IMG/VR virus record: IMGVR_UViG_3300023202_000247 | Span: 124,001-188,000 of that record | Length of the DNA stretch: 64,000 bases | Strand: one strand, 5' to 3' | Shown here: positions 4,858-46,715 of the stretch, one piece after another | Layout of the letters: each line of letters begins with the position of its first letter | Position numbering within the stretch: position 1 is the first letter of the stretch | Notes under the pieces: model-generated | The model's database searches: none | What the model was told of the DNA's origin: nothing | What the model saw: only the letters and a program-made list of their open reading frames with translations | Position numbers and translations under genes: made by a program

Positions 4858-5523
4858 ATGAGGAAGAATTCTGAAGAGGAAGAACAAGAGTACACTTCGT
4901 GCCGAAAATACCAAGATGTTTACGATAAACTTGCAAAGAAAAGAAAGATAATTCTTTCAGAGGAAATAGATAGAAACATTGCAACGGCTATAGTTGGAAT
5001 GCTGTTTCTCTTCGATGTGGAAGATGATGCCACACCAATAGAATTGTACATCAACTCTCCGGGTGGAGAGGTAGAACAGTTCTTTGCCATCTATGACGCA
5101 ATGAACTCAGTTAGAGCCCCTGTTGCAACCTATTGTGTAGGAGAGGCATCTAGTGCGGCGGCAATCCTTTTAGCATCTGGACATAAAGGAATGCGATATG
5201 CTGCACCCAATGCCCATATCATGATTCATCAGATACAAATCTATGGTGGTGTTGATGGTAGTGGTACGACGATAGAGAACGAGGCCAAGGCTATTAAAAA
5301 GATGAAGCGTCATCTTACAGAAATTATAGCAAAGCATACTGGTCAGACTTATCGTAAAGTAAATAGAGACTGTGAGATTGATAAGTATATGACTGCTCAA
5401 GAATCATTAGAGTATGGTATAATTGATCATATCATGCCGATTCAAAAAGAAATTCCAGAGCTGAAGAAATCATCTCGAGGCAGACGTTCCAAGAAGCTTC
5501 CTGCTAAGAATAACGAGGCATAG
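4858..5523 (+). CDS. clpP: ClpP-family protease subunit
   Basis: IELYINSPGG, GEASSAAAILLA (Ser), IMIHQ (His), DKYMTAQESLEYGIID. Confidence 0.92.
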   Translation: MRKNSEEEEQEYTSCRKYQDVYDKLAKKRKIILSEEIDRNIATAIVGMLFLFDVEDDATPIELYINSPGGEVEQFFAIYDAMNSVRAPVATYCVGEASSAAAILLASGHKGMRYAAPNAHIMIHQIQIYGGVDGSGTTIENEAKAIKKMKRHLTEIIAKHTGQTYRKVNRDCEIDKYMTAQESLEYGIIDHIMPIQKEIPELKKSSRGRRSKKLPAKNNEA

Positions 5524-5530
5524 GTATATG
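5509..5530 (+). promoter_or_regulatory. putative late promoter motif AATAA-N4-GCAT-N6-ATG
   Basis: same spacing at 29407, 29763, 36139. Confidence 0.5.
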
Positions 5531-7000
5531 CCACGCAGTAGAGCAAAAGATCCACAGCAAGAGCAGCTTAGAGAGCGTAAAGACCAATGGAATAAAGAGG
5601 TTAGCAAGCTTATTACTGCTCTAATAGCTTTGAAGAAAGGTGTTAATGGTCAACCAATCGATGATATTGGATTGCCATCGTCTAGAATTACAGAGCCACT
5701 TCCACCACAAGTTGGTCAAATTGGAAATGGGTTGGGTACACGTTTCACTCAGATGTTTTCGGATTTGGACCGAATCATTTCTGAGCAAGACTCGTACTCA
5801 TCACAATTCACTCAACAAAGAGAACAAAAGAATCAAGATAGGTTGAGAGAGATGCAAGAAAGAGATAACCTTACAACAGCATCTCTCACCGCTCATGCTT
5901 CGAATAAATTCACGAGGATACTGACGTATCTCAAAAGTCCATTCCAATTTGGAGATAAAGATCGCGCGGCTCGTATTTCTATGTTGAGGGCCGCGGCCAA
6001 AATGTATGACAATGTTAGTGATGTTGGAGATGCCATTCTCAAACGAAACAGAACGTCCATACCAGAAGCTTTTTATGATGCATTGAATATATATCTTACA
6101 GCTGATAAAGAGTTCTTTGATAAAGTAGATGCTTTGTATGAAAGCAAAAAAGCAAAGAAAGAAAAAGTTGAAGAGCTGGTTGGTGAAAAGAAAGAAGAGG
6201 TAAAGCCCAAGGAACCTGAGCCGAATCCTGAGCCTGCTCAGCCTGCTCAGCCGGCTCAGCCAGTTGTCCCAGTTGATTCTGACAAGGACGGTCTCATTAC
6301 AAACAATGAGGTTAAAGTTGGTCAGTTGAAAAGCTTATTGAACCAACAACTTGGAAGAATTGAAAAATTGCAATTATCATTTTCTAAGGTTCAAAATTCT
6401 AATGAGGAAGCTGCAAACTTCAACTCTTACATGGGCTTCTTGCAATCATCCATAACAGATATGATAACTACACTTGATGCTGGTGGAGGTAATATAAACG
6501 AACTTACCAAATCATATAAGAAAATTGATGGTGATTTATCTGCGTTTGAACAACGTATCAGTTCCGTAGCATCGATTGAAAATGAAATGATGCGCAAGGT
6601 TGCTGGTAATATGGTTGGACGCTGGTTCCGTCGTAGACTGCTTGACATATTTCAAAGTGACGATTCAGAACTTAGATTGATACTAGAACAAGATACTAAT
6701 GTTCTTAAAAAAGATTTAAACGAGGTAATGAATGTATTAGAGTCTTCTAGTGCTGATATAGATACGGTTCGGAAACTTGCAGGGGACGTTGCATTGTCTC
6801 TTGCTACCATGGCTGCGACACTTCAACGATTGGCAGGAATTCACAATTCAATTTCTCGTGTCAAACACCTAACTGAAAAGTCTAAAGGTAAGACAATAAA
6901 GCTTTTAGATATTAAAGATGCAGATATAAAAAAACTAAGTTTGATGAGTCGTAAATACTATAGCATTGGCGACAAGATGAAAAAGGATGATGATGGATAA
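5528..7000 (+). CDS. hypothetical helical protein with PAQ linker, possibly an internal virion protein
   Basis: 490 aa; EPEPNPEPAQPAQPAQP; two similar domains after TAHA and RKVA. Confidence 0.6.
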   Translation: MPRSRAKDPQQEQLRERKDQWNKEVSKLITALIALKKGVNGQPIDDIGLPSSRITEPLPPQVGQIGNGLGTRFTQMFSDLDRIISEQDSYSSQFTQQREQKNQDRLREMQERDNLTTASLTAHASNKFTRILTYLKSPFQFGDKDRAARISMLRAAAKMYDNVSDVGDAILKRNRTSIPEAFYDALNIYLTADKEFFDKVDALYESKKAKKEKVEELVGEKKEEVKPKEPEPNPEPAQPAQPAQPVVPVDSDKDGLITNNEVKVGQLKSLLNQQLGRIEKLQLSFSKVQNSNEEAANFNSYMGFLQSSITDMITTLDAGGGNINELTKSYKKIDGDLSAFEQRISSVASIENEMMRKVAGNMVGRWFRRRLLDIFQSDDSELRLILEQDTNVLKKDLNEVMNVLESSSADIDTVRKLAGDVALSLATMAATLQRLAGIHNSISRVKHLTEKSKGKTIKLLDIKDADIKKLSLMSRKYYSIGDKMKKDDDG

Positions 7001-7418
7001 GGTTTCTATCGGTAATCATGAATTTAAAACTATTGTTGCTATTACTGATGAAGAGCAGCAGCGTGGGTTGATGTTTGTAGAGTGGCCGCCACCCGTTATG
7101 AGTTTTCCAGTCGTTACGGCACAGGTTCGTCAGTTCTGGATGAAAAATACTCAAGTACCTCTTGACATCGTATTCTGCCGTGATAATGTTGTGGTTGCTA
7201 TTTGTGAAGGTGAACCTCACAGTACGAAGATGGTTGGTCCTCGATGTCCAACCGACCTTGTGGTTGAATTACCACATGGCACGGCTGATGCTTGCGGGAT
7301 TCAGCCGGGAGATCCAGTGAGGCTGAAATTGTCTCAGGAGACTCTAACGCGCCGCGCCAAACACCTGATGACCGGCATATTCGGCTCAAAAGGTAAAAAT
7401 CTTGCACGGTCAATCTGA
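6987..7418 (+). CDS. DUF192 family protein
   Basis: EEQQRGLMF, FWMKNTQVPLDIVF, VVELPHG...GIQPGD. Confidence 0.85.
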   Translation: MMMDKVSIGNHEFKTIVAITDEEQQRGLMFVEWPPPVMSFPVVTAQVRQFWMKNTQVPLDIVFCRDNVVVAICEGEPHSTKMVGPRCPTDLVVELPHGTADACGIQPGDPVRLKLSQETLTRRAKHLMTGIFGSKGKNLARSI

Positions 7419-7430
7419 CCGTGTTATGGT
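7402..7430 (+). promoter_or_regulatory. sigma70-like promoter with a palindromic operator-like site in the spacer
   Basis: TTGCAC-N17-TATGGT; CACGGTCA-atc-TGACCGTG at 7405-7423. Confidence 0.45.
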
Positions 7431-7465
7431 GTAGCTGTAATTGAGCAGCGGCCAACTATAAGGGG

Positions 7466-7493
7466 TTGACTTTATCGTCAGTCTGGTTAAGTT
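7466..7493 (+). promoter_or_regulatory. sigma70-like promoter positioned for a leaderless FtsK mRNA
   Basis: TTGACT-N16-TAAGTT, 7 nt before ATG 7501; no SD. Confidence 0.55.
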
Positions 7494-7500
7494 GTATTTC

Positions 7501-8523
7501 ATGAGCATAGAGAAGTTGAATCAGGTTCTAGATGCCTTTGGTGTTGATGCTACGTGTGTCAATCATCAAATTCATCGTCATATCGCAACCTATGATATAG
7601 AGCTTGCGCCAGGTACTCGTGTCGCCTCGTTGGAAAAGTATGGTCGTGAGATTGCCTTGGCCATCAAATCAAAGACGACTCCAATTTTCAAGGTGGTTAC
7701 CGAGCTTGGAATCGTCAGGATGCAGGTTGCGATGAATGTCTCTGAGACATTGCTTCTCGAAGACATCCTAAATGGCAATGCACCGGTTGATATACAGCTT
7801 CCCATCTTGCTCGGTGAAGATGACACGGGCAACAAGCTCTGGACTGATTTTGCAAAGCACCCACACACATTGGTTGCGGGAGGCACCGGGAGTGGCAAGT
7901 CAACGCTGCTACACGCTCTCATTGCCAATGCTTATTGGCTCACAGCAACTGGTCAGCGCAACGTAAGGGTTTTTCTAGGAGACCCGAAGCGTGTCGAGTT
8001 TTCTGTTTACGATGGTGCTCCAAAGATGAATGGTATCATTCGTACAATCAAGTATGATTACGAATCGATTCTTTCAATGTTTAATATGCTCCATACTATC
8101 ATGGAACATCGATATGCGATGCTTGCCGATCATCACGTTCAAGATATTTCTAAATTGGATGTTCCAATCTATCTCGTTATCATCGATGAGGTTGCAGACT
8201 TGATGATGCAAGATAAAGGTAAGCAGTTTGAAAAGCTTGTTACGAAACTTGCTCAAAAAAGTCGAGCGGCCGGAATCCATTTGGTAATGGCAACACAGCG
8301 TCCCAGTACGGACGTAATTACGGGCCTCATCAAAGCAAACTTTCCTGCGAGAATCGCTTGTAGAGTTGCTAGTCGCACAGACTCCCAGGTTATTCTGGAC
8401 TCTCCCGGTGCTGAAAATCTACTGGGTAAAGGTGATGCTTTGTTGCAAAACCATGAGACAGATAAGCTGCGATTTCAAGCAGCCTTCTTTAGCCCAGAAG
8501 GTTTTAGACAAAAAGCCGCATGA
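7501..8523 (+). CDS. FtsK/SpoIIIE-family ATPase (motor domain only)
   Basis: PHTLVAGGTGSGKS, DPKRVEF, VIIDEVADLM, LAQKSRAAGIHLVMATQRPS, GAENLLGKGD. Confidence 0.92.
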   Translation: MSIEKLNQVLDAFGVDATCVNHQIHRHIATYDIELAPGTRVASLEKYGREIALAIKSKTTPIFKVVTELGIVRMQVAMNVSETLLLEDILNGNAPVDIQLPILLGEDDTGNKLWTDFAKHPHTLVAGGTGSGKSTLLHALIANAYWLTATGQRNVRVFLGDPKRVEFSVYDGAPKMNGIIRTIKYDYESILSMFNMLHTIMEHRYAMLADHHVQDISKLDVPIYLVIIDEVADLMMQDKGKQFEKLVTKLAQKSRAAGIHLVMATQRPSTDVITGLIKANFPARIACRVASRTDSQVILDSPGAENLLGKGDALLQNHETDKLRFQAAFFSPEGFRQKAA

Positions 8524-8554
8524 ATGATGGGCGCTAAGCGCCCATCATTCATGC
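8518..8554 (+). terminator. perfect 18-bp inverted repeat at the FtsK stop
   Basis: GCATGAATGATGGGCGCT-a-AGCGCCCATCATTCATGC; no U tract. Confidence 0.6.
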
Positions 8555-8563
8555 CTGACCTAA

Positions 8564-10039
8564 TTGTTACTAGAATATATGAATATAATAGAAAGAATAA
8601 ACTCAGAGCCGACAGAATTTTTAGATGAAGATGTTGTAGATGATACTGTGGATGAAATAGTAAACCACTATGATTCTACCTTGAGCAAAATGGCAACGTA
8701 CGCTTACTCTCCGAGGGAGATAGAGGCTAGCGTTGCACGCAATGCATTTAGAGAGATAGCTAGAGAGGAGCTGACAAAAGGCTTCAGGCGCTTCATGCTT
8801 AAGGCAGAGTATTGGAGGGACAAACGTGATATTGACCCCTACCTTCGCGTTTGTATAAGAAGCTTAGCGAACCGTCTCAAGAATGATAAAGAGTGCGCTG
8901 CGCGCTCCATTGTTCCGGTATGTCCGGCTTGCAGAATCTATGGCGAGCGTATCTTTCTCACCACTGATGGTAAAAATCTTCGCTGTACCAATTGTGAACA
9001 CAGACTAAATGAGATTGAAACATTAAATAATCTCGATACGCATCAAATACGCGCAATAGAAACAGAAAAATATTTGAGAAAAATCTTTGAAGTTCATAGC
9101 AAGTCTGGGCACAGATGTCCAGATTGTTCTCGATTCATTCCAGACAGTTACACGCGCCAATTTGGTGTGCGTTGTATATACGATGACTGCGCATGGTTTG
9201 GGTCTAAAGATGACATGGAGAGTATGAATCATCCGGTTGGTTTTTCAACAAGATACTTAATATCTTTAGATAAAGGGCCGACAGATGATTCGACAATTAC
9301 CATGTCGAATTTGATTGGCGATGACAAGCCATCAGCTTTTGACGAGCTTCGCTTTAAAGAAAAAATTCGCAATGACTACGCGCTCGTTGAAAGTGTAATA
9401 TCTGAACAAATTGAATCTATAAATAGAAATGGGGATCAAAAGAAAAACAAGTTAAAGTTATTTATGTATAAAGCATTTCAAAACATGTTGAATAAGTATC
9501 CTGACGATATGCTTTTGTATCTTGTGCATCGACGCCACAATAAAAGCTCAGATCCTATTCAGACGAGGTTGTTTCAAGAATTTGTCAAGTCATTGGAAAA
9601 TGCAATTCCTTTTACGCTAACTCGTAGCGGAGTTGATCGCGAAATTGAAACGTTGCTTGATCCAACTTTAAAGATATTTTTGGGTTGTAGTGAGTTTATA
9701 GCAACTGTTCAAGATGATGGTACGATACCAAACAATACTAAAGAAATTTACATAGGCGGTCGTAAGTCAACAAACTTTGGTCCTTGTTTCATAGGTTACT
9801 TGGTAGATGTAATCGATATAGATACGAATGAATCTTACTTATCAAAGGTTGAGTCTCATACATTTATTCAAGTAAATCTGCCAGAGGAACTGGCTGGTCG
9901 CAAAGTAAAGGTGATTCATTTCAGGATCCCGTCCCATTATGAGATGGGAGGATTAGTATATTTACAAAGAATACGTAAAAAGATAGTTGATAGCATCTTC
10001 TTTAGAAAAAATGGAAGAAGAAGAAAGGCTGGAGAATGA
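8564..10039 (+). CDS. zinc-ribbon protein, possibly a divergent sigma70-like factor
   Basis: sigma2-like segment, CxxC pairs, then the sigma3.2-like ISLDKGPTDDSTITMSNLIGDDKPSAFDEL. Confidence 0.45.
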   Translation: MLLEYMNIIERINSEPTEFLDEDVVDDTVDEIVNHYDSTLSKMATYAYSPREIEASVARNAFREIAREELTKGFRRFMLKAEYWRDKRDIDPYLRVCIRSLANRLKNDKECAARSIVPVCPACRIYGERIFLTTDGKNLRCTNCEHRLNEIETLNNLDTHQIRAIETEKYLRKIFEVHSKSGHRCPDCSRFIPDSYTRQFGVRCIYDDCAWFGSKDDMESMNHPVGFSTRYLISLDKGPTDDSTITMSNLIGDDKPSAFDELRFKEKIRNDYALVESVISEQIESINRNGDQKKNKLKLFMYKAFQNMLNKYPDDMLLYLVHRRHNKSSDPIQTRLFQEFVKSLENAIPFTLTRSGVDREIETLLDPTLKIFLGCSEFIATVQDDGTIPNNTKEIYIGGRKSTNFGPCFIGYLVDVIDIDTNESYLSKVESHTFIQVNLPEELAGRKVKVIHFRIPSHYEMGGLVYLQRIRKKIVDSIFFRKNGRRRKAGE

Positions 10040-40714: not shown

Positions 40715-43399
40715 ATGATTAATTTACCTTATGTTAGTTTACACAATCAAACTACTTTTTCTACGATGGATGCATTGGTTAGCGTCCAAGAATTGTGTGA
40801 GCTGGCAAAGAAAATGGGACATGAGGCGGTGGCCATTACCGATCATGGAACCTTAGCATCCATGTGGGATGCCTATAAAATAGGTAAAAAGATGGGAATC
40901 AAAGTGATTCCCGGCTGTGAATTCAACTTCGTCGAGTCTGTCGACAATGATGAACCTTTACGTCACATAATTCTTTTGGCAAAAAATGCCACGGGTTATC
41001 ACAACTTACTGCTTCTCAATAAATTAGGCTTTGATAATAAAGCTATCATGTTCAAGTCTGCAATTCCGAGAATTGATTGGAAGCTTTTAGAAGATCACAG
41101 CGATGGTTTGATTTGTACCACAGCTTGTGGCAACGGAATCATCAGTCAGCTCATCATGCAAAAGAAACATGATGAAGCTAAAGAGTCTTTGAAAAGACTC
41201 AAAGATATATTTGGTGATGACCTAGCTATCGAATTGCAAGCACATGCTCTCGTACGAAAAGAGACGGCTTATTCCGGAGCTATTGATCAAAGGTTCATCA
41301 ACCTAAACCTTAAAAAGCTTTCAGAAGAACTCGGCATTAGAGCAATCGTTACGACGAATACACATTATGCTGATAAAGATGATTATCGTGCTCACGATAC
41401 ACTTCTAGCAATTAGAAGTGGTCAAACTGTATTCTCCGGAAATCGATTGAAATACAATGTCAATGATTTTTATTATAAACATCAGTTGGAGTTAGCATCA
41501 TTCTTTGTTCGTTTGCGTGGGTTGTATCCACAAAGCTTTGTTGAAAGTTTGTTTGAGAATACAGTTTACTTTGCAAACAAGTGCGAAGATCCCGAATGGA
41601 TTGATTTGAAGTATTCCAATCCGACCGGGAAGGAGTTGCCAAAATTTCCAGTCAGAGATGAGCCAAATCTAGATGCATTCGATGCTTGGGCAAAAAACAA
41701 TGCTCCCGGTCTTGATGATGACGTTGCGTACTTGAGGTATCGTTGTGACCTGGGATTGAAAAAGATGATCCCAGAATCAAAACATGATGAATACAAAGCA
41801 CGTTTGAAGGAAGAGTTCGATGTTATCGAATATCACGGCTTTAGCTCTTACATGCTCATTGTTGCCGATTTCATTAATTATGCAAGAAAAAATGGTATTC
41901 GCGTTGGACCCGGAAGGGGATCGGTAGCTGGCTCGCTGATTGCGTATCTATTGGAAATTCACGTAGCAGACCCCATCAAGTATGGTCTCATTTTCGCTCG
42001 TTTTCACAACAAAGAGAAAACATCATTTCCAGATATTGATGTTGACTTTGCTCCATCGGGACGTGACGAGGTACAAAACTATATTAGACAAAAATATGGT
42101 GAGGACTATGTTGCTCATGTTTCCAATGTTAATACTATAACGCCGAAGGTGTATGTAAAAGACATTGCCAGAGCACATGAGTTTGGTGGTGATAGAAAAG
42201 AGGCGGTAAAGATTGGAAATGAAATTGCTGACTTCATGCCTTCAGGCCCGAGCGCTCCCAAAAGCTTGGAAAAGGCCAAAGAGGAGTATGCTTTGTTTGC
42301 AGAGGCAATGGTTCAATTTCCGGAGCTTGCGGAGTTTGCCGATAAAATCGGAGGCAAGCCAAGAGCTTGGTCTACACACGCCGGTGGTTTAATCATTGGT
42401 GCCCGACCATTACCGGGTCTCGTTCCAGTACGTCGAGATGTACACGACTCCACGGCAATCGAGTATGACAAAGACAAGGCTGAAGAAATTGGCTTGGTCA
42501 AGATGGATACTCTCGGGTTGGAAACGCTCGACATCATAACCGATACCTATAAGTTGATTAAAGCAGTGGGTAAGGATGTACCACCAGACCCTCCGAGATT
42601 TGATGAATATGACAAAGAAACTTATGATTTAATATCTTCTGGTGATACCCTTTGTATTTTTCAGTTGAGCGGTATTGCGTCCACACTTTGTCAGTCAATC
42701 AAACCAAATAGCATCGAAGAGATTAGTTATATCAATGCGCTCGTACGTCCAAGTGCAAAAGCAATTGTTAAAGATTTCATTGCAACTCGTGAAGGAAAAA
42801 AGAAAGTAGAATTGCTGGATTCTTCTTTGGAACGTGCCTTTGGTGAAACATATGGGTTCGGACTATATGAAGAGTGTTTGCTTTATTTGGCTCAAGATGT
42901 TGCAGGATGGGATCTTCACTCAGCTGATAGGCTGAGAAAACTTACAAAAGAGAAAGGTAAGAATCCCAAAAAAGTTGCTGGGTGGCGTGAAGAGTTCATC
43001 AATGATGGTAAGAGCCAAGGAATTGATGAACATATTGTTACTAAGATTTGGGATGAAGTTGTAAATGGTTTCCAAGGATATGGGTTTAATAAATCATTAT
43101 ATTCTTTGCAGAAAGTTGATACATTTACTAAGGATGGTCAATTTTTAACATCCAAAGCAATTAAATATATAAGTTCAAATGAATATGTGCGTTCTCGTGA
43201 TGAAAAAACCGGTGTGGACATTTATGTTAGGGTAATTGATAATCATGACCACGGAAAGTTAGAAGTTGTTGATATTGAATTAGAAACTGGAGAAAAGGTT
43301 AGATGTACTATGAATCATAAGTTTAGAACAGTTGAAACCGGTGATATGGTACCTCTTCATCAAATTATTGAGAATGACTATTCTATAGTAGTGAAATGA
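40715..43399 (+). CDS. dnaE: DNA polymerase III alpha, N-terminal part fused to N-intein
   Basis: PHP (AITDHG, PGCE), GPGRGSVAGSL, FPDIDVDF, STHAGG, LVKMDTLGL; extein ends at GYGFNK. Confidence 0.95.
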   Translation: MINLPYVSLHNQTTFSTMDALVSVQELCELAKKMGHEAVAITDHGTLASMWDAYKIGKKMGIKVIPGCEFNFVESVDNDEPLRHIILLAKNATGYHNLLLLNKLGFDNKAIMFKSAIPRIDWKLLEDHSDGLICTTACGNGIISQLIMQKKHDEAKESLKRLKDIFGDDLAIELQAHALVRKETAYSGAIDQRFINLNLKKLSEELGIRAIVTTNTHYADKDDYRAHDTLLAIRSGQTVFSGNRLKYNVNDFYYKHQLELASFFVRLRGLYPQSFVESLFENTVYFANKCEDPEWIDLKYSNPTGKELPKFPVRDEPNLDAFDAWAKNNAPGLDDDVAYLRYRCDLGLKKMIPESKHDEYKARLKEEFDVIEYHGFSSYMLIVADFINYARKNGIRVGPGRGSVAGSLIAYLLEIHVADPIKYGLIFARFHNKEKTSFPDIDVDFAPSGRDEVQNYIRQKYGEDYVAHVSNVNTITPKVYVKDIARAHEFGGDRKEAVKIGNEIADFMPSGPSAPKSLEKAKEEYALFAEAMVQFPELAEFADKIGGKPRAWSTHAGGLIIGARPLPGLVPVRRDVHDSTAIEYDKDKAEEIGLVKMDTLGLETLDIITDTYKLIKAVGKDVPPDPPRFDEYDKETYDLISSGDTLCIFQLSGIASTLCQSIKPNSIEEISYINALVRPSAKAIVKDFIATREGKKKVELLDSSLERAFGETYGFGLYEECLLYLAQDVAGWDLHSADRLRKLTKEKGKNPKKVAGWREEFINDGKSQGIDEHIVTKIWDEVVNGFQGYGFNKSLYSLQKVDTFTKDGQFLTSKAIKYISSNEYVRSRDEKTGVDIYVRVIDNHDHGKLEVVDIELETGEKVRCTMNHKFRTVETGDMVPLHQIIENDYSIVVK
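43094..43396 (+). mobile_element. split intein N-fragment (101 aa, Ser1)
   Basis: starts SLYSLQKV right after FNK; G-x-x-E-V, IELETGEKVRCTMNHKF (block B TxxH). Confidence 0.88.
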
Positions 43400-45381
43400 C
43401 TAATGACTTAACGCAAAAATTCTTAAATAAGATCCCTAAACAATATCGTGAAAATATTGTGATCTTATCACCAGAAAAAGGTGGCAATTCAAGAGTAGAA
43501 TATCTGCATCCGATTTGTGGATGCAAAACAACCAGTACATTGAAGACTTTTGTTAAGCGAAAGTCTTTTGACAGTTGCTTAAAATGTTCCAATCAAAAAA
43601 ACTTTAACTACTATAAGAGTAAAATTGCTTTTCCGAATAATATAGATTTACTGGAGCCATTTCACGGTGGAGCAACAAAAGTTAGTTTCAAACACAATAT
43701 ATGTGAGTGTATAATAAACACAACATTGTCTAGACTGACCAACAGAGATCAGCTTGATTATTGTAAGAAATGCTATCAAGCATATTATTATGATTCAGCA
43801 TCAAATCTTGACAATGTAAAAATAATTGGTAAAAATAAAGGTTATAATTCTGACGCTGAGTATACATGCTCAAAATGTAGTAAAATATTTTATACGAAAC
43901 TTTCAAATCTTATTAACAGAAAAGATATTAGCAAGTGCCATGAATGCTCTAAACAAGAAACTTTAGATAGTTACTTGACGTTACTTTCTAAAGACATATT
44001 GAATAGAATAAAAGTTTTAAATCATAATGGCAGTTATTCTAGAATTAAATATGATAATCCATGCGGACATCAAACAGAATCAACTATATCTGATTTTGTG
44101 AAGCGCGAACAATTTGACTATTGTCAACATTGTTCTCAAAAAAAGAGTGTTACTGATTACATTGATTTGATTGATAAAAAGTATCATCAAAATATAGAAA
44201 TTGTTAAAGATTTGGGAGCAAAGTCTCCAATTATTTATACGTGCCCATCTTGTGGAAACAAAAGAAGATTAACTGTCAAATCACTACAACGTTTTGACGA
44301 TTGCTTGAATTGTAATAACAGTTGTCGTATTTCAAAGCAAGAAATGATTGATAATCTCAAGCCGTTTTTGAACAACATAAAAATCGTTGATGGTTTTCCA
44401 GGGCATAGAACCAGTGTTGTAACCGGTAACTGCGTTGCTTGTAATTCCAAGGTTGAAAACTATTACTTTAATTTTTCAAGATACTATACTTATTATAACG
44501 AACCAAGATGCAGTAGTTGCAGCCCAAAGAGCATAGAGCAAAAAATGCTGGCCAATTTTGTTGGGTCGTTAACAGATTTCATAGAAAATGATAAGTCAAT
44601 AATCAAATCATCAGAAACAGATCGTAACCTAGAAATCGATATTTATTGTCCTAAGGAAAAGTTTGCTATTGAATATAATGGTTTGCTTTGGCATTCCGAA
44701 AAATATGGAAAAGATAAGAATTATCATTTCTATAAAACAAGACAGTGTCAAGAGCATGGTATATATTTGTTACATATATGGTCAGATAAATATAAGAAAC
44801 ATCCAGAAATATATCACTCTATAATAAGATACTGTTTGGGTAAAATAAAGAATAGAATATTTGCAAGACGCTGTATTTTGAAAGAATTGGACAAGAATAT
44901 CTCAAGAGATTTTTTTACAACAAATCATCTTGATGGCAATGTCGGTTGTCTAAAAGCATGGGGTTTGTTTCATGATGAAAAGTTGATTCAAGCTATCTCG
45001 GTAAGGCGTGTGAGTAAGCAAAACAGTAAATACGCTTCTTATTTAGAAATTGCAAGAATGGCAACTCTTTTAAACCATTCAGTGGTTGGAGGCGAATCAA
45101 AACTGTTGAGCTTTGTTGAAAAGTTTGCTCGTGATAATGAATATGCTGGTATCTTGAATTATGTAAGTGCTGATTTTGGAAAGCCTCAACAAAATAAATA
45201 TCATTTTGAGTACAAAGGTATTACTGATGTTTCGTATTGTTATACGGATGGTAATAAAAGAATTTCTCGACAACGCCTTCAAAACAGACCTAAAGGTGTT
45301 AGTGAGCGCGCTCATGCCAATAGTTTGAATCTCTGGCGCGTTAATCTAACACCAAACTTCATTTATATATTGAATTTCTAA
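43396..45381 (+). mobile_element. free-standing homing-endonuclease-like gene: six zinc-ribbon repeats, Vsr/DUF559-like nuclease, C-terminal Mom/GNAT-like domain
   Basis: six Cys/His repeats; LEIDIY...AIEYNGLLWH; LEIARMA...VVGGESKLL; lies between the intein halves. Confidence 0.78.
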
Positions 45382-45491
45382 TGTCAAAAATAAAATCACT
45401 AAAACCGGTTGGTAAATTGCAAACATATGATCTGGAAGTTGACCATCCAGATCATCAGTATTATTTATCAAACGGAGTTTTAACTAGCAAC
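45381..45491 (+). mobile_element. split intein C-fragment (37 aa)
   Basis: MSKIKSLKPVGKLQTYDLEVDHPDHQYYLSNGVLTSN followed by Ser+1. Confidence 0.92.
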
Positions 45492-46715
45492 AGCCACTCT
45501 ACACTTTACTCTATGATATCATTTCATACTGCATATCTAAAAGCTCATTTTCCTTTAGAGTTTTTGGTTGCAAACTTGAAGAGTGAGACAAAAAAGACAT
45601 CAAACCCCAAGGCCAAGGACAATGTCTTAAAAATAAAGGACGAGATTCGTAGTCTTGGAATAAAGTTGATTGCTCCCAACGTAAACAACAGCTTGAGGGT
45701 TTACAAAATTATCACCGACAAAACGTTGATGACGGGACTCAACAGCATCAAGTATGTTAGCGATGATGCGATTGAAGATATTGTAGCTAAAAGACCATTT
45801 AAGAGCTATAGTGATTTTATTGCCAGAACAGATAGTCGCAAAGTAAGAGCCAACTCCATTCAAGCCCTTGCAGCATCTGGTTGTCTCGATGATTTCGGAT
45901 TACCACGTAAGTTGATGTTTCTTTACGCATCGGATTTTAGAAAGAAACAAAGCTCGGCTTTGAGAGCAGCCAAAAAGGCTGGTAATGATGAGTTGGTGAA
46001 GCAGATTACCGAAGATTTCGAATATCCATGGCCAGAGGATTCTGAATGGTCGGTGCAAGAACTTTTTGCCTTGGAAGAGTATTTCATGGGGGAGGGTTTG
46101 AGCGGCACGGTACAAGAACGCTATGTCGGTTTCTTCGATTCTAGCTCTATTGATTATAGACTTTTGCCCAAGATGTTTCCATATCGTCTTCTTGACGAAG
46201 ATGATAAAGTTAACAGAAAAAAGAATACACACCCAATACCAAATAGTAAAGTTCCATATTTGAAAGGAATTATAAAAAGACTATTTTCTTTTAAGGTTAA
46301 GAAAGATGATTCGCCAATTCGCGGTCAAGAAATGGCAATTATTACCATACAAGATCCATATGGAACGGATATGACTTGTATAGCGTTTCCTGATACATGG
46401 GTGCATATACAGAAGCGCATCTATGAGGATTTGTCTGGACGCTCTGCAAAACTAGATGTTGGTCTTGCTGTTGCCATGACCGGTTCGTTTCAGCACGAAA
46501 ATGAACATGTTCATTCATTCATCATTGATGATATATTGGATATACAGGAGTCTCCGGCTCTTCCAAAGGATAGAGATTCTAAAAGTATCAAACTGCCTCG
46601 TAAGAAAAAGGTTAAAGAGGACCCCGAGAAATTGGAAAAAGAAGAACTAGCTGAAATCATGGAAGATGATATGATTCAAGAGGGTTTTGTGTTTGATGAG
46701 CCGGAACCATTATAA
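45381..46715 (+). CDS. dnaE: DNA polymerase III alpha, C-terminal part preceded by C-intein
   Basis: SHSTLYSMISFHTAYLKAHFPLEF, GLNSIKYV (HhH), OB fold MAIITIQD. Confidence 0.93.
   Translation: MSKIKSLKPVGKLQTYDLEVDHPDHQYYLSNGVLTSNSHSTLYSMISFHTAYLKAHFPLEFLVANLKSETKKTSNPKAKDNVLKIKDEIRSLGIKLIAPNVNNSLRVYKIITDKTLMTGLNSIKYVSDDAIEDIVAKRPFKSYSDFIARTDSRKVRANSIQALAASGCLDDFGLPRKLMFLYASDFRKKQSSALRAAKKAGNDELVKQITEDFEYPWPEDSEWSVQELFALEEYFMGEGLSGTVQERYVGFFDSSSIDYRLLPKMFPYRLLDEDDKVNRKKNTHPIPNSKVPYLKGIIKRLFSFKVKKDDSPIRGQEMAIITIQDPYGTDMTCIAFPDTWVHIQKRIYEDLSGRSAKLDVGLAVAMTGSFQHENEHVHSFIIDDILDIQESPALPKDRDSKSIKLPRKKKVKEDPEKLEKEELAEIMEDDMIQEGFVFDEPEPL

What the first reader, a model, noticed from the sequence alone, without database searches (positions are those of the whole stretch)
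8564..10039. Possible new sigma-factor architecture: sigma2, zinc ribbons, sigma3.2 finger, no sigma4
Seen: IVNHYDSTLSKMATYAY...WRDKRDIDPYLRVCIRSLANRLKN resembles sigma70 regions 2.1-2.4. CPAC/CTNC and CPDC/CIYDDC zinc ribbons follow, then ISLDKGPTDDSTITMSNLIGDDKPSAFDEL, which resembles the SLD...D...L.D.I.D region 3.2 finger. The C-terminus shows no sigma4 HTH. Known: T4 gp55 is a sigma lacking region 4 that reads a single compact late element. Inference: this may be the factor that reads the GCAT motif.
Basis: inference. Interest (0 to 1): 0.62.

Follow-up and report, generated by a model that had tools for sequence, protein, structure and literature searches.

The report
Sigma2-like zinc-ribbon protein of huge phages
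This gene encodes a conserved, unnamed protein of a clade of 300-460 kb phages whose first ~110 residues fold like the core-binding, promoter-melting domain of bacterial sigma factors, followed by two zinc ribbons and a novel C-terminal module, so it may be a new kind of host-RNA-polymerase-directing factor, but this remains unproven.

Summary
The ORF (window 8564-10039, +; likely true start ATG 8579) is a real gene. It belongs to a closed family of about 260 sequence clusters, all uncharacterised and all on huge-phage contigs, with no Pfam or PHROG match.

- **Sigma2-like N-terminus.** An AF2 model (pLDDT 89.7) searched against 48,161 PDB chains puts residues 4-114 on sigma region-2 domains: SigW Z 8.0, T4 gp55 Z 7.3, and about half of the top 50 rows. 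Weak sequence and language-model signals agree.
- **Two zinc ribbons.** Two invariant C4 zinc ribbons are present.
- **No sigma4.** None was found by sequence, or by folding the helical domain alone.

What is not supported:
- **The "3.2 finger".** It is the least conserved, disordered, partly deleted linker.
- **The GCAT link.** GCATAA is only weakly enriched, and to a similar weak degree in long-form and short-form relatives.
- **A plain sigma reading.** The family's most conserved part is the zinc ribbons plus the C-terminal helical, beta-barrel and basic-helix module. One lineage with a complete 452 kb genome lacks the sigma2-like domain altogether. Every genome of the clade also carries a canonical sigma2+sigma4 factor.

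Best reading (about 0.45): a host-RNA-polymerase-binding initiation or specificity factor, gp55-like in logic but with new architecture. Novelty: new variant of a known kind.

The parts
8564..10039 (+). Whole ORF, 491 aa from TTG 8564. The probable true start is the ATG at 8579 (486 aa).
8573..8905 (+). N-terminal helical domain, residues 4-114, sigma region-2-like fold. Y93 is invariant and F62 at least 90% conserved. The conservation hot spot HW..GRDIN.YL lies in the loop before the last helix.
   Evidence: VIA-wide hits to SigW, SigI6, pro-sigmaK, AlgU, T4 gp55, RpoS and sigma70 with Z 6.5-8.0 and rmsd 2.0-3.4 A. SigW E=0.04. RpoE hhalign E=0.016. ESM feature score 0.93 to Sigma70_r2 clusters.
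8912..9001 (+). Zinc ribbon 1, residues 117-146 (CPAC ... CTNC)
   Evidence: C120, P121 and C144 invariant; C123 and C141 at least 90%. Zn_ribbon Pfam hits in most members.
9002..9091 (+). Variable helical hairpin between the two ribbons, residues 147-176
   Evidence: Model secondary structure. Column identity 0.34.
9092..9247 (+). Zinc ribbon 2 plus the conserved H223-P224 motif, residues 177-228 (CPDC ... CIYDDC)
   Evidence: C185, C188, C204, C209 and H223 invariant. Column identity 0.60.
9248..9334 (+).
   Evidence: pLDDT about 52. Length 24-45 aa, net charge median -3, identity 0.31. Shortened or deleted in short forms.
9335..9610 (+). Four-helix domain, residues 258-349, no known fold match
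   Evidence: Folded alone with pLDDT 91. Only generic helical matches, Z at most 6.1 with rmsd 5-7 A, and no sigma3, sigma4 or gp33.
9611..9943 (+). Small beta-barrel domain, residues 350-460, among the best-conserved parts (PNNTxE, GGRK, GPCFIG, HFRIPSHYEM)
   Evidence: Column identity 0.60. VIA matches to barrel domains of phage neck and tail proteins, Z 5-7.7, rmsd 2.0-2.8 A, 59-73 residues.
9944..10036 (+). Basic C-terminal helix, residues 461-491 (LQRIRRKIVDS...), the most conserved segment
   Evidence: Column identity 0.69. Helix 463-483 in the model.
8518..8554 (.). Perfect 17-bp hairpin between the FtsK-like gene and this ORF, overlapping the upstream stop codon
   Evidence: dG -33.6 kcal/mol, z -8.1. 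The T-run lies only on the minus-strand side.
4858..8523 (+). Conserved upstream block: ClpP (4858-5523), 490-aa coiled-coil protein (5528-7000), DUF192 (6987-7418), FtsK/SpoIIIE-like ATPase (7492-8523)
   Evidence: Pfam. DUF192 lies directly upstream of the target family in 28 of 28 related loci (ClpP detected in 26, the 490-aa protein in 26). The FtsK-like gene lies between them in 19 of 28.

Best explanation
The gene encodes a multidomain factor that most likely binds the host RNA polymerase. It would do so through an N-terminal sigma2-like domain, docking on the beta-prime clamp helices and contacting a -10-like element. In that reading it helps redirect transcription in a clade of huge phages that lack their own RNA polymerase.

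It has no sigma4. The double zinc ribbon, acidic linker, four-helix domain, beta-barrel and basic C-terminal helix would supply the second anchoring or regulatory function. In T4 that function is split between gp55, gp33 and the clamp.

Shown: the gene is real and conserved; the domain architecture; the sigma2-like fold; the zinc ribbons; the absence of a detectable sigma4.

Inferred: RNA polymerase binding, promoter recognition, and any role for the C-terminal module.
For: (1) Fold. Residues 4-114 of a pLDDT-89.7 model match sigma region-2 domains. About half of the top 50 of 48,161 chains are sigma factors (SigW Z 8.0 / 2.7 A / 90 aa; T4 gp55 Z 7.3 / 3.0 A / 93 aa; sigma70 1sig rmsd 2.0 A). 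As an internal control, the helical domain 254-372 searched the same way gave only unrelated helical proteins at rmsd 5-7 A.

(2) Independent weak signals agree.
- The top PDB sequence hit of the N-domain profile is SigW, E=0.04.
- hhalign to E. coli RpoE regions 2.1-2.2 gives E=0.016.
- The segment around invariant Y93 aligns to region 2.3/2.4 of T4 gp55 and of the phage's own sigma, though not significantly.
- ESM-feature neighbours at 0.93 are Sigma70_r2 clusters.
- BFVD Foldseek ranks phage sigma factors 3rd and 7th.

(3) The N-domain's conservation hot spot lies in the loop and helix start that, by established sigma structures, contact the -10 non-template strand (inference).

(4) The clade depends on host polymerase. 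No RNAP beta, beta-prime or T7-type polymerase was found in this record or in 7 near-complete relatives. No gp55 family or gp33 was found.

(5) It is a single-copy core gene. It sits in a conserved early-region block that further upstream holds HU and a DksA/TraR zinc-finger protein.
Against: - No significant sequence match to any sigma profile.
- Z of about 8 is within the range that helical bundles can reach by chance (note).
- The polar D/Q/E signature of region 2.2 is not conserved.
- The N-domain is the less conserved part of the protein. It is missing, with no stand-alone copy, in a lineage that includes a complete 452 kb genome.
- Every genome of the clade already has a canonical sigma2+sigma4 factor.
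- Neither upstream motif tracks the N-domain. TGATATAT is enriched in the genome that lacks it and absent from a long-form genome. GCATAA is weak everywhere.
- The C-terminal two thirds resemble no transcription protein.
Confidence: 0.45

Rival explanations
1. It binds RNA polymerase but is not a promoter-specificity subunit. It would be a host-takeover regulator or appropriator that occupies the sigma2 site or another site on the polymerase. That would block host sigma factors or modulate the phage's own canonical sigma.
For: The sigma2-like fold with degenerate core-binding and -10 signatures. A canonical phage sigma is always present and could do the promoter reading. DksA/TraR-like and HU genes lie in the same conserved block. 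No motif tracks the N-domain.
Against: Invariant Y93 and the conserved loop sit where sigma factors touch DNA. An inhibitor need not keep a 380-residue conserved C-terminal module. There is no similarity to any known anti-sigma or appropriator.
Confidence: 0.2
2. The conserved core (two zinc ribbons, helical domain, beta-barrel, basic helix) works in a DNA or nucleoid transaction. It may act with the FtsK/SpoIIIE-like translocase, DUF192 or ClpP encoded beside it. The N-terminal helical domain is then an accessory whose likeness to sigma2 is analogy or an exapted fold.
For: The core is better conserved than the N-domain. The N-domain is dispensable in a lineage. DUF192 is directly upstream in 28 of 28 loci. 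The FtsK-like gene is immediately upstream, sometimes overlapping, in 19 of 28. The FtsK-like protein lacks a gamma (sequence-reading) domain. The terminase is a separate gene.
Against: The FtsK-like gene sits tens of kb away in other genomes of the clade, so adjacency is not obligatory. The sigma-factor enrichment among fold hits is strong and specific. No known DNA-transaction domain was recognised in the core.
Confidence: 0.25
3. It is a structural or assembly protein of the virion. The beta-barrel resembles domains of phage neck and tail proteins.
For: VIA matches of residues 373-456 to neck, adaptor and tail-tube-type barrels, Z 5-7.7. Atlas rows include 'head to tail adaptor' and 'YomU_Tube'.
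Against: The gene lies in the replication and early region, about 55 kb from the terminase-portal-sheath module. Small barrels of this type are widespread; ATP synthase and RND adaptor barrels are also listed. Zinc ribbons and a sigma2-like domain are not virion features.
Confidence: 0.07

Closest known systems
Bacteriophage T4 gp55 (late sigma factor; PHROG 234; PDB 7d7d chain F)
   Same: A phage-encoded sigma2-only logic. The N-domain superposes on gp55 (Z 7.3, rmsd 3.0 A, 93 residues). There is no sigma4. The phage relies on host polymerase.
   Different: gp55 is 185 aa with no zinc ribbons or C-terminal module. There is no significant sequence relation (hhalign E=0.086; no PHROG 234 match). 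No T4-type clamp or gp33 partner was found in the clade. The N-domain is dispensable in one lineage.
ECF (group 4) sigma factors, e.g. B. subtilis SigW (5wuq), E. coli RpoE
   Same: These are the best structural and sequence matches to residues about 8-114. The register is the same in both kinds of alignment, with F62 aligned to the conserved F of region 2.2.
   Different: ECF sigmas are sigma2-linker-sigma4 proteins of about 190 aa. Here sigma4 is replaced by about 375 residues of zinc ribbons, helical domain and barrel. The region 2.2 acidic and polar signature is not kept. Pfam Sigma70_r2 and Sigma70_ECF models do not score.
SigI-type sigma factors (C. thermocellum SigI6, 8i24)
   Same: A precedent for a sigma2 domain joined to a C-terminal domain that is not sigma4. 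It is among the top fold hits (Z 7.9).
   Different: The SigI C-terminal domain was not matched by the target's C-terminal parts. SigI has no zinc ribbons.
The phage's own canonical sigma (G000:C1:309353-310027, 224 aa)
   Same: It is also a single-copy core gene of the same phage clade and is presumably directed at the same host polymerase.
   Different: It has recognisable Sigma70_r2 and Sigma70_r4_2. Its profile shows no significant similarity to the target (E=0.54 and 0.21).
Zinc-ribbon initiation factors of archaea and eukaryotes (TFIIB/TFB, TFIIE-alpha/TFE)
   Same: A helical DNA- or polymerase-binding domain followed by a C4 zinc ribbon. There is a weak profile hit to the TFIIE-alpha helix plus ribbon (E=0.025).
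   Different: The hit falls to E=0.56 when the ribbons are searched alone. There are no cyclin or winged-helix domains. The resemblance is generic to zinc ribbons.

Membership tests
Sigma-70 family | Significant match to the Sigma70_r2 or Sigma70_ECF sequence profiles | tested here: not met
   No Pfam hit for the full protein at E<=0.1. Of 56 N-domains, only one weak Sigma70_ECF hit at E=0.11. Best sequence signals: SigW E=0.04 and RpoE hhalign E=0.016.
Sigma-70 family | Sigma2 domain fold | tested here: met
   VIA-wide: about half of the top 50 rows are sigma2 domains, Z 5.4-8.0, rmsd mostly 2.0-3.4 A over 76-95 residues. The control helical domain gave none. Caveat: Z is below the level that excludes a common helical arrangement.
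Sigma-70 family | Sigma4 helix-turn-helix domain (-35 recognition and beta-flap binding) | tested here: not met
   No Sigma70_r4 by Pfam, by PDB profile, or by hhalign to the phage sigma. Fold searches of residues 254-372 folded alone found none. The only signal is an ESM feature score of 0.80, which is chance level.
Sigma-70 family | Aromatic and basic residues of regions 2.3/2.4 that capture the -10 non-template strand | tested here: inconclusive
   Invariant Y93, and conserved W84 and G87-R88-D89, lie in the loop and helix start that weak alignments place on region 2.3/2.4. The alignments are not significant.
Sigma-70 family | Binding to RNA polymerase core (beta-prime clamp helices) and promoter-specific initiation | not testable with these tools
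   This needs pull-down and in vitro transcription. No RNA-seq run holds the sequence.
T4 gp55 family (PHROG 234 / 12791) | Profile match to the gp55 family | tested here: not met
   No PHROG hit for the target. PHROG 234 and 12791 are absent from this record. PHROG 234 is absent from 26 of 27 related records. hhalign to T4 gp55 gives E=0.086 over 22 columns.
T4 gp55 family (PHROG 234 / 12791) | Works with gp33 and a gp45-type sliding clamp | tested here: not met
   No PF02916 clamp and no gp33-like sequence in this record or in three complete relatives. The helical domain compared with gp33 gives E=0.41. Divergent analogues cannot be excluded.
C4 zinc ribbon | Two CxxC knuckles about 15-20 residues apart on beta-hairpins | tested here: met
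   Two sets of four Cys, invariant or at least 90% conserved. Strands flank them in the model. Zn_ribbon_IS1595 hits 44 of 56 members, TiaS 39 of 56, and TFIIB-type 18 of 56. Metal binding itself is not testable here.

The most novel reading that the evidence does not exclude
A single polypeptide that replaces the T4 gp55 + gp33 (+ clamp) arrangement. In this reading it is a sigma4-less bacterial-virus initiation factor. A sigma2 domain melts a compact promoter element. A double zinc ribbon and a new helical/beta-barrel module anchor it to the host polymerase, or to a DNA-tracking partner such as the adjacent FtsK-like translocase. That would be a hybrid of sigma logic and TFIIB/TFE-like zinc-ribbon logic, conserved as a core gene of a whole clade of 300-460 kb phages.
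Probability: 0.2. Interest if true: 0.8.

Novelty: new variant of a known kind. Interest (0 to 1): 0.55.

Why it matters
Most huge phages without their own RNA polymerase are thought to steer the host enzyme with ordinary sigma homologues (PMC7824862, PMC13282480). This family would add a second, architecturally new polymerase-directing factor that is a core gene of an uncultured clade. It would also give a natural example of a sigma2 domain working without sigma4 but with zinc ribbons.

If instead the sigma2-like domain is an accessory, the conserved zinc-ribbon and barrel core is an unknown function. [quoted passage not shown]

Either way, the family currently has no Pfam, PHROG or literature description in the libraries searched.

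Tried and rejected
- **Pfam and PHROG scans of the full protein:** nothing. tblastn against 50,697 GenBank phage records: nothing.
- **Foldseek against PDB:** nothing significant for the whole model or the helical domain.
- **ESM Atlas structure search:** no informative rows.
- **BFVD:** only an unannotated 211-aa family fragment plus weak sigma rows.
- **hhalign of the N-domain or whole family against the phage's own sigma family:** not significant.
- **hhalign of the helical domain against T4 gp33:** not significant.
- **Diverse ECF profile:** an attempt to build one from RpoE homologues returned only near-identical sequences, so profile-profile comparison with a broad ECF alignment was not done.
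- **Co-folding:** the N-domain with E. coli beta-prime residues 200-350 gave 'no answer' (score 0.00, controls not run). This is no evidence either way. The host is unknown and the beta-prime fragment was folded without an alignment.
- **Host inference:** a ClpP scan of bacterial genomes found nothing. tRNAs are uninformative, with a single tRNA-Met. Shine-Dalgarno usage is weak and uninformative.
- **Expression:** no RNA run holds the sequence.
- **Sigma4 lead:** the ESM feature score of 0.80 for residues 254-491 was rejected after the domain folded alone matched no sigma4.
- **TFIIE-alpha lead (E=0.025):** rejected as generic zinc-ribbon similarity.
- **FtsK as obligatory partner:** weakened, because the gene is non-adjacent in 9 of 28 loci and lies elsewhere in those genomes.
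- **Operator limits:** no alternative genetic code was needed (standard code gives 92% coding density).
Full report
**Setting.** The window is bases 124001-188000 of a 321 kb IMG/VR virus record, estimated 75% complete. Nearly all genes are on the + strand. The standard genetic code gives 92% coding density. The record carries:
- RIIA;
- a family-B DNA polymerase split by an HNH/intein-type insert, and SbcCD;
- RtcB, and a ribonucleotide reductase with an endonuclease insert;
- terminase, portal and tail sheath.

It is therefore a huge myovirus. No multisubunit or T7-type RNA polymerase was found in it or in seven near-complete relatives of 409-459 kb. These phages must therefore use the host enzyme, with the caveat that very divergent phiKZ-type subunits could escape Pfam. 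This matches the 'group 2' jumbo phages of Iyer et al. (PMC7824862), which lack a polymerase and encode sigma factors.

**The observation.** The TTG at 8564 is the first possible start. Homologues and the ESM Atlas record begin at the ATG at 8579, which is the likelier start.

The gene is real:
- The word-based search found 128 full-length homologues of 30-89% identity. All are unnamed, on metagenomic contigs of up to 459 kb.
- An exhaustive HMMER search of 1.84 billion cluster representatives found 261 proteins, 239 of them below 1e-10. Only the best 150 rows are listed, and all of those are family members or fragments of them.
- Pfam, PHROGs and a tblastn of all GenBank phage records gave nothing.

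**Architecture.** An AF2 model built on a 56-sequence alignment has mean pLDDT 89.7. The figures in brackets are the mean share of sequences carrying the commonest residue per column. The model shows:
- a helical N-domain, residues 4-114 (0.48);
- zinc ribbon 1, residues 117-146 (0.52);
- a variable helical hairpin, residues 147-176 (0.34);
- zinc ribbon 2 with an invariant His-Pro, residues 177-228 (0.60);
- a disordered acidic linker, residues 229-257 (0.31);
- a four-helix domain, residues 258-349 (0.55);
- a small beta-barrel, residues 350-460 (0.60);
- a basic C-terminal helix, residues 461-485 (0.69).

Six of the eight ribbon cysteines are invariant and the other two (C123, C141) are at least 90% conserved. 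Generic zinc-ribbon Pfam models hit most members.

Foldseek against the PDB found nothing. An exhaustive VIA-align search of 48,161 representative chains placed residues 4-114 on sigma region-2 domains:

| Match | Z | rmsd (A) | Aligned residues |
|---|---|---|---|
| SigW | 8.0 | 2.7 | 90 |
| SigI6 | 7.9 | - | - |
| pro-sigmaK | 7.6 | - | - |
| AlgU | 7.5 | - | - |
| T4 gp55 | 7.3 | 3.0 | 93 |
| RpoS region 2 | 7.1 | - | - |
| sigma70 (1sig) | 6.5 | 2.0 | 79 |

Many ECF sigmas were also matched. About half of the top 50 rows are sigma factors.

The tool warns that Z below about 13 can arise for helical bundles. I therefore used the protein's own helical domain (254-372) as a control. Folded alone at pLDDT 91, it returned only a miscellany of membrane and BAR-type helical proteins at rmsd 5-7 A, and no sigma domain. 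The sigma enrichment is thus specific to the N-domain.

Independent weak signals point the same way:
- The best PDB sequence hit of the N-domain profile is the same SigW chain, E=0.04, in the same register.
- hhalign to E. coli RpoE aligns residues 30-79 with regions 2.1-2.2 at E=0.016. The nearly invariant F62 falls on the conserved Phe.
- The segment DPYLRVCIRSLANR, with invariant Y93, aligns to region 2.3/2.4 of T4 gp55 (E=0.086) and of the phage's own sigma (E=0.54).
- ESM feature neighbours at 0.93 are Sigma70_r2 clusters.
- BFVD ranks phage sigma factors 3rd and 7th.

None of these is significant alone, and Pfam Sigma70_r2 does not score. My conclusion is that a sigma2-like fold is well supported. 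Distant homology is probable, at about 0.7. Membership of the sigma-70 family by sequence criteria is not met.

**No sigma4, and no conserved '3.2 finger'.** No sigma4 or sigma3 was found by Pfam, by PDB profile search, or by hhalign to the phage's own sigma. Fold searches of the helical domain alone found none either. An ESM feature lead to Sigma70_r4 scored only 0.80, which is chance level.

It has the lowest conservation and pLDDT about 52. It is 24-45 residues long and net acidic, with only a loose SL[NDQ]...[FI]QD pattern. It is largely deleted in shorter members. An acidic flexible linker is compatible with a sigma-like finger, but it is not evidence for one.

1. The most conserved part of the family is the zinc ribbons plus the C-terminal module, not the sigma2-like domain.
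2. Members of 300-340 aa start directly at zinc ribbon 1. In a 349 kb and a complete 452 kb genome (direct terminal repeats), the gene begins at the ribbon and overlaps the end of the FtsK-like gene. No stand-alone N-domain is found anywhere in those genomes.
3. Every genome tested (10 of 10) also has a canonical 207-225 aa sigma with recognisable regions 2 and 4. In this record it lies at G000:C1:309353-310027.
4. The clade lacks the T4 gp55 family. It is absent from this record and from 26 of 27 related records; the single weak hit lies inside the canonical sigma gene. The clade also lacks gp33 and the T4-type clamp.

**Context.** In 28 related loci DUF192 lies directly upstream of the target in every case, and ClpP and the 490-aa coiled-coil protein were each detected in 26. 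A 330-340 aa FtsK/SpoIIIE-like ATPase with no gamma domain lies between DUF192 and the target in 19 of the 28. HU and a DksA/TraR zinc-finger gene lie further upstream in two relatives whose called genes were examined. I did not check this window for them. Where the FtsK-like gene is not adjacent, it lies tens of kb away. The terminase is a different gene. A perfect 17-bp hairpin (8518-8554, dG -33.6, z -8.1) separates the FtsK-like gene from the target here.

**The GCAT inference.** Two short motifs are enriched within 70 nt upstream of genes. GCATAA usually lies 7-31 nt before the start codon, for example at window 4836 before clpP. TGATATAT lies mostly 15-33 nt before late and structural genes. 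I compared this genome with a long-form relative and with the relative that lacks the N-domain. The table gives upstream regions carrying the motif, with the expected number in brackets:

| Motif | This genome | Long-form G001 | Short-form G027 |
|---|---|---|---|
| GCATAA | 12 (2.5) | 11 (4.2) | 9 (4.2) |
| TGATATAT core | 12 (1.3) | 0 (1.6) | 19 (1.9) |

Neither motif tracks the sigma2-like domain. The assignment of the GCAT motif to this protein therefore has no support, although it is not excluded.

**Mechanism.** The explanation I think most likely (0.45) is that the protein binds host RNA polymerase through the sigma2-like domain and acts in initiation or promoter choice. The zinc-ribbon and C-terminal module would replace what sigma4 or gp33 do elsewhere.

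Rivals:
- a polymerase-binding regulator that is not a specificity subunit (0.20);
- a DNA or nucleoid transaction carried out by the conserved core, possibly with the FtsK-like ATPase, DUF192 or ClpP, with the N-domain as an accessory (0.25);
- a virion or assembly protein, suggested only by the barrel's likeness to neck and tail domains (0.07).

The steps shown are the architecture, the fold similarity, the conservation pattern and the genomic distribution. Polymerase binding, DNA recognition and any partner are inferred.

**Comparison with the known, and novelty.** It works most like T4 gp55 or an ECF sigma2 domain, and SigI is a precedent for sigma2 joined to a non-sigma4 domain. It fails the sequence criteria of the sigma-70 and gp55 families and lacks sigma4, so I do not file it as a member of either.

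I found no description of this family in Pfam, PHROGs, UniProt viral names or the paper library. I rate it a new variant of a known kind, with interest 0.55. That would rise to about 0.8 if it proves to be a single-chain, zinc-ribbon-anchored, sigma4-less initiation factor.

Noticed in passing
G000:C1:41906-45355 (outside the window; L005:1906-5355); solitary copy at window 47970: The phage carries a CRISPR array of at least 11 units of a ~36-nt repeat, AACAAAGGATGCTACGCTCCTTAAAGTTGTAGAC, with a period of 66-88 nt and part of the array duplicated. It sits directly downstream of a 671-aa Cas12m homologue (PDB 23vw_A, E=1.2e-24). A second repeat variant with compensatory stem changes (GCTGTG..CACAGAC) occurs as solitary or 37-nt tandem units upstream of about a dozen phage genes, all on the + strand. 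These may be Cas12m-related regulatory sites. Cas12m in megaphages has been reported (PMC12607003)..
   Followed up: partly
G000:C1:309353-310027 (L016:9353-10024), outside the window: A canonical compact sigma factor of 224 aa, with Sigma70_r2 at 20 bits and Sigma70_r4_2 at 33 bits. It is present once in each of 10 genomes of the clade tested. Some genomes carry an extra 285-291 aa sigma. The short-form genomes have a 237-aa ORF with a weak sigma4-like match..
   Followed up: partly
window 8518-8554: A perfect 17-bp stem with a 3-nt loop overlaps the stop codon of the FtsK-like gene (dG -33.6 kcal/mol, z -8.1). The T-run is on the minus-strand side only, so it is not a canonical + strand terminator..
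   Followed up: partly
window 35781; G000:C1 188962, 204058, 218945, 223232, 233584, 249054, 260353, 265527, 286741, 298273: A compact motif (t)TGATATAT(a) lies 15-33 nt upstream of start codons of structural-region genes (window 35781 is 54 nt upstream), with no conserved -35-like partner. It is a candidate late promoter, similar to an extended -10 element. It is enriched about 9-fold here and in relative G027, and absent upstream of genes in relative G001. G001 instead shows strong enrichment of (A/G)TTGACAT..
   Followed up: partly
It is found in 12 upstream regions genome-wide against 2.5 expected, which is marginal after multiple testing. Plain GCAT is not enriched in intergenic DNA (91 against 94 expected)..
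   Followed up: partly
window 7492-8523: An FtsK/SpoIIIE-like ATPase of 343 aa has the alpha and motor domains but no gamma domain. It is a core gene of the clade and is distinct from the terminase (window 63113 onward). Its role in a tailed phage is unknown..
   Followed up: partly
window 40715-46715: The family-B DNA polymerase is split into an 894-aa N-part and a 444-aa C-part, separated by a 661-aa HNH/homing-endonuclease ORF. A similar endonuclease insertion lies in the ribonucleotide reductase large subunit at G000:C1:310040-313747.
   Followed up: no
window 4858-7418 and related loci L018, L020-L046: DUF192 lies directly upstream of the target family in 28 of 28 related loci. ClpP and the 490-aa coiled-coil, low-complexity protein were each detected in 26. 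HU and DksA/TraR-type zinc-finger genes lie further upstream in two relatives..
   Followed up: partly
L045:6971-7984 (IMGVR_UViG_3300035182_002596) and L046: A short form of the family (337 aa) starts at zinc ribbon 1 and overlaps the end of the FtsK-like gene. No N-domain copy exists elsewhere in these genomes. This is a natural deletion variant useful for dissecting function..
   Followed up: yes
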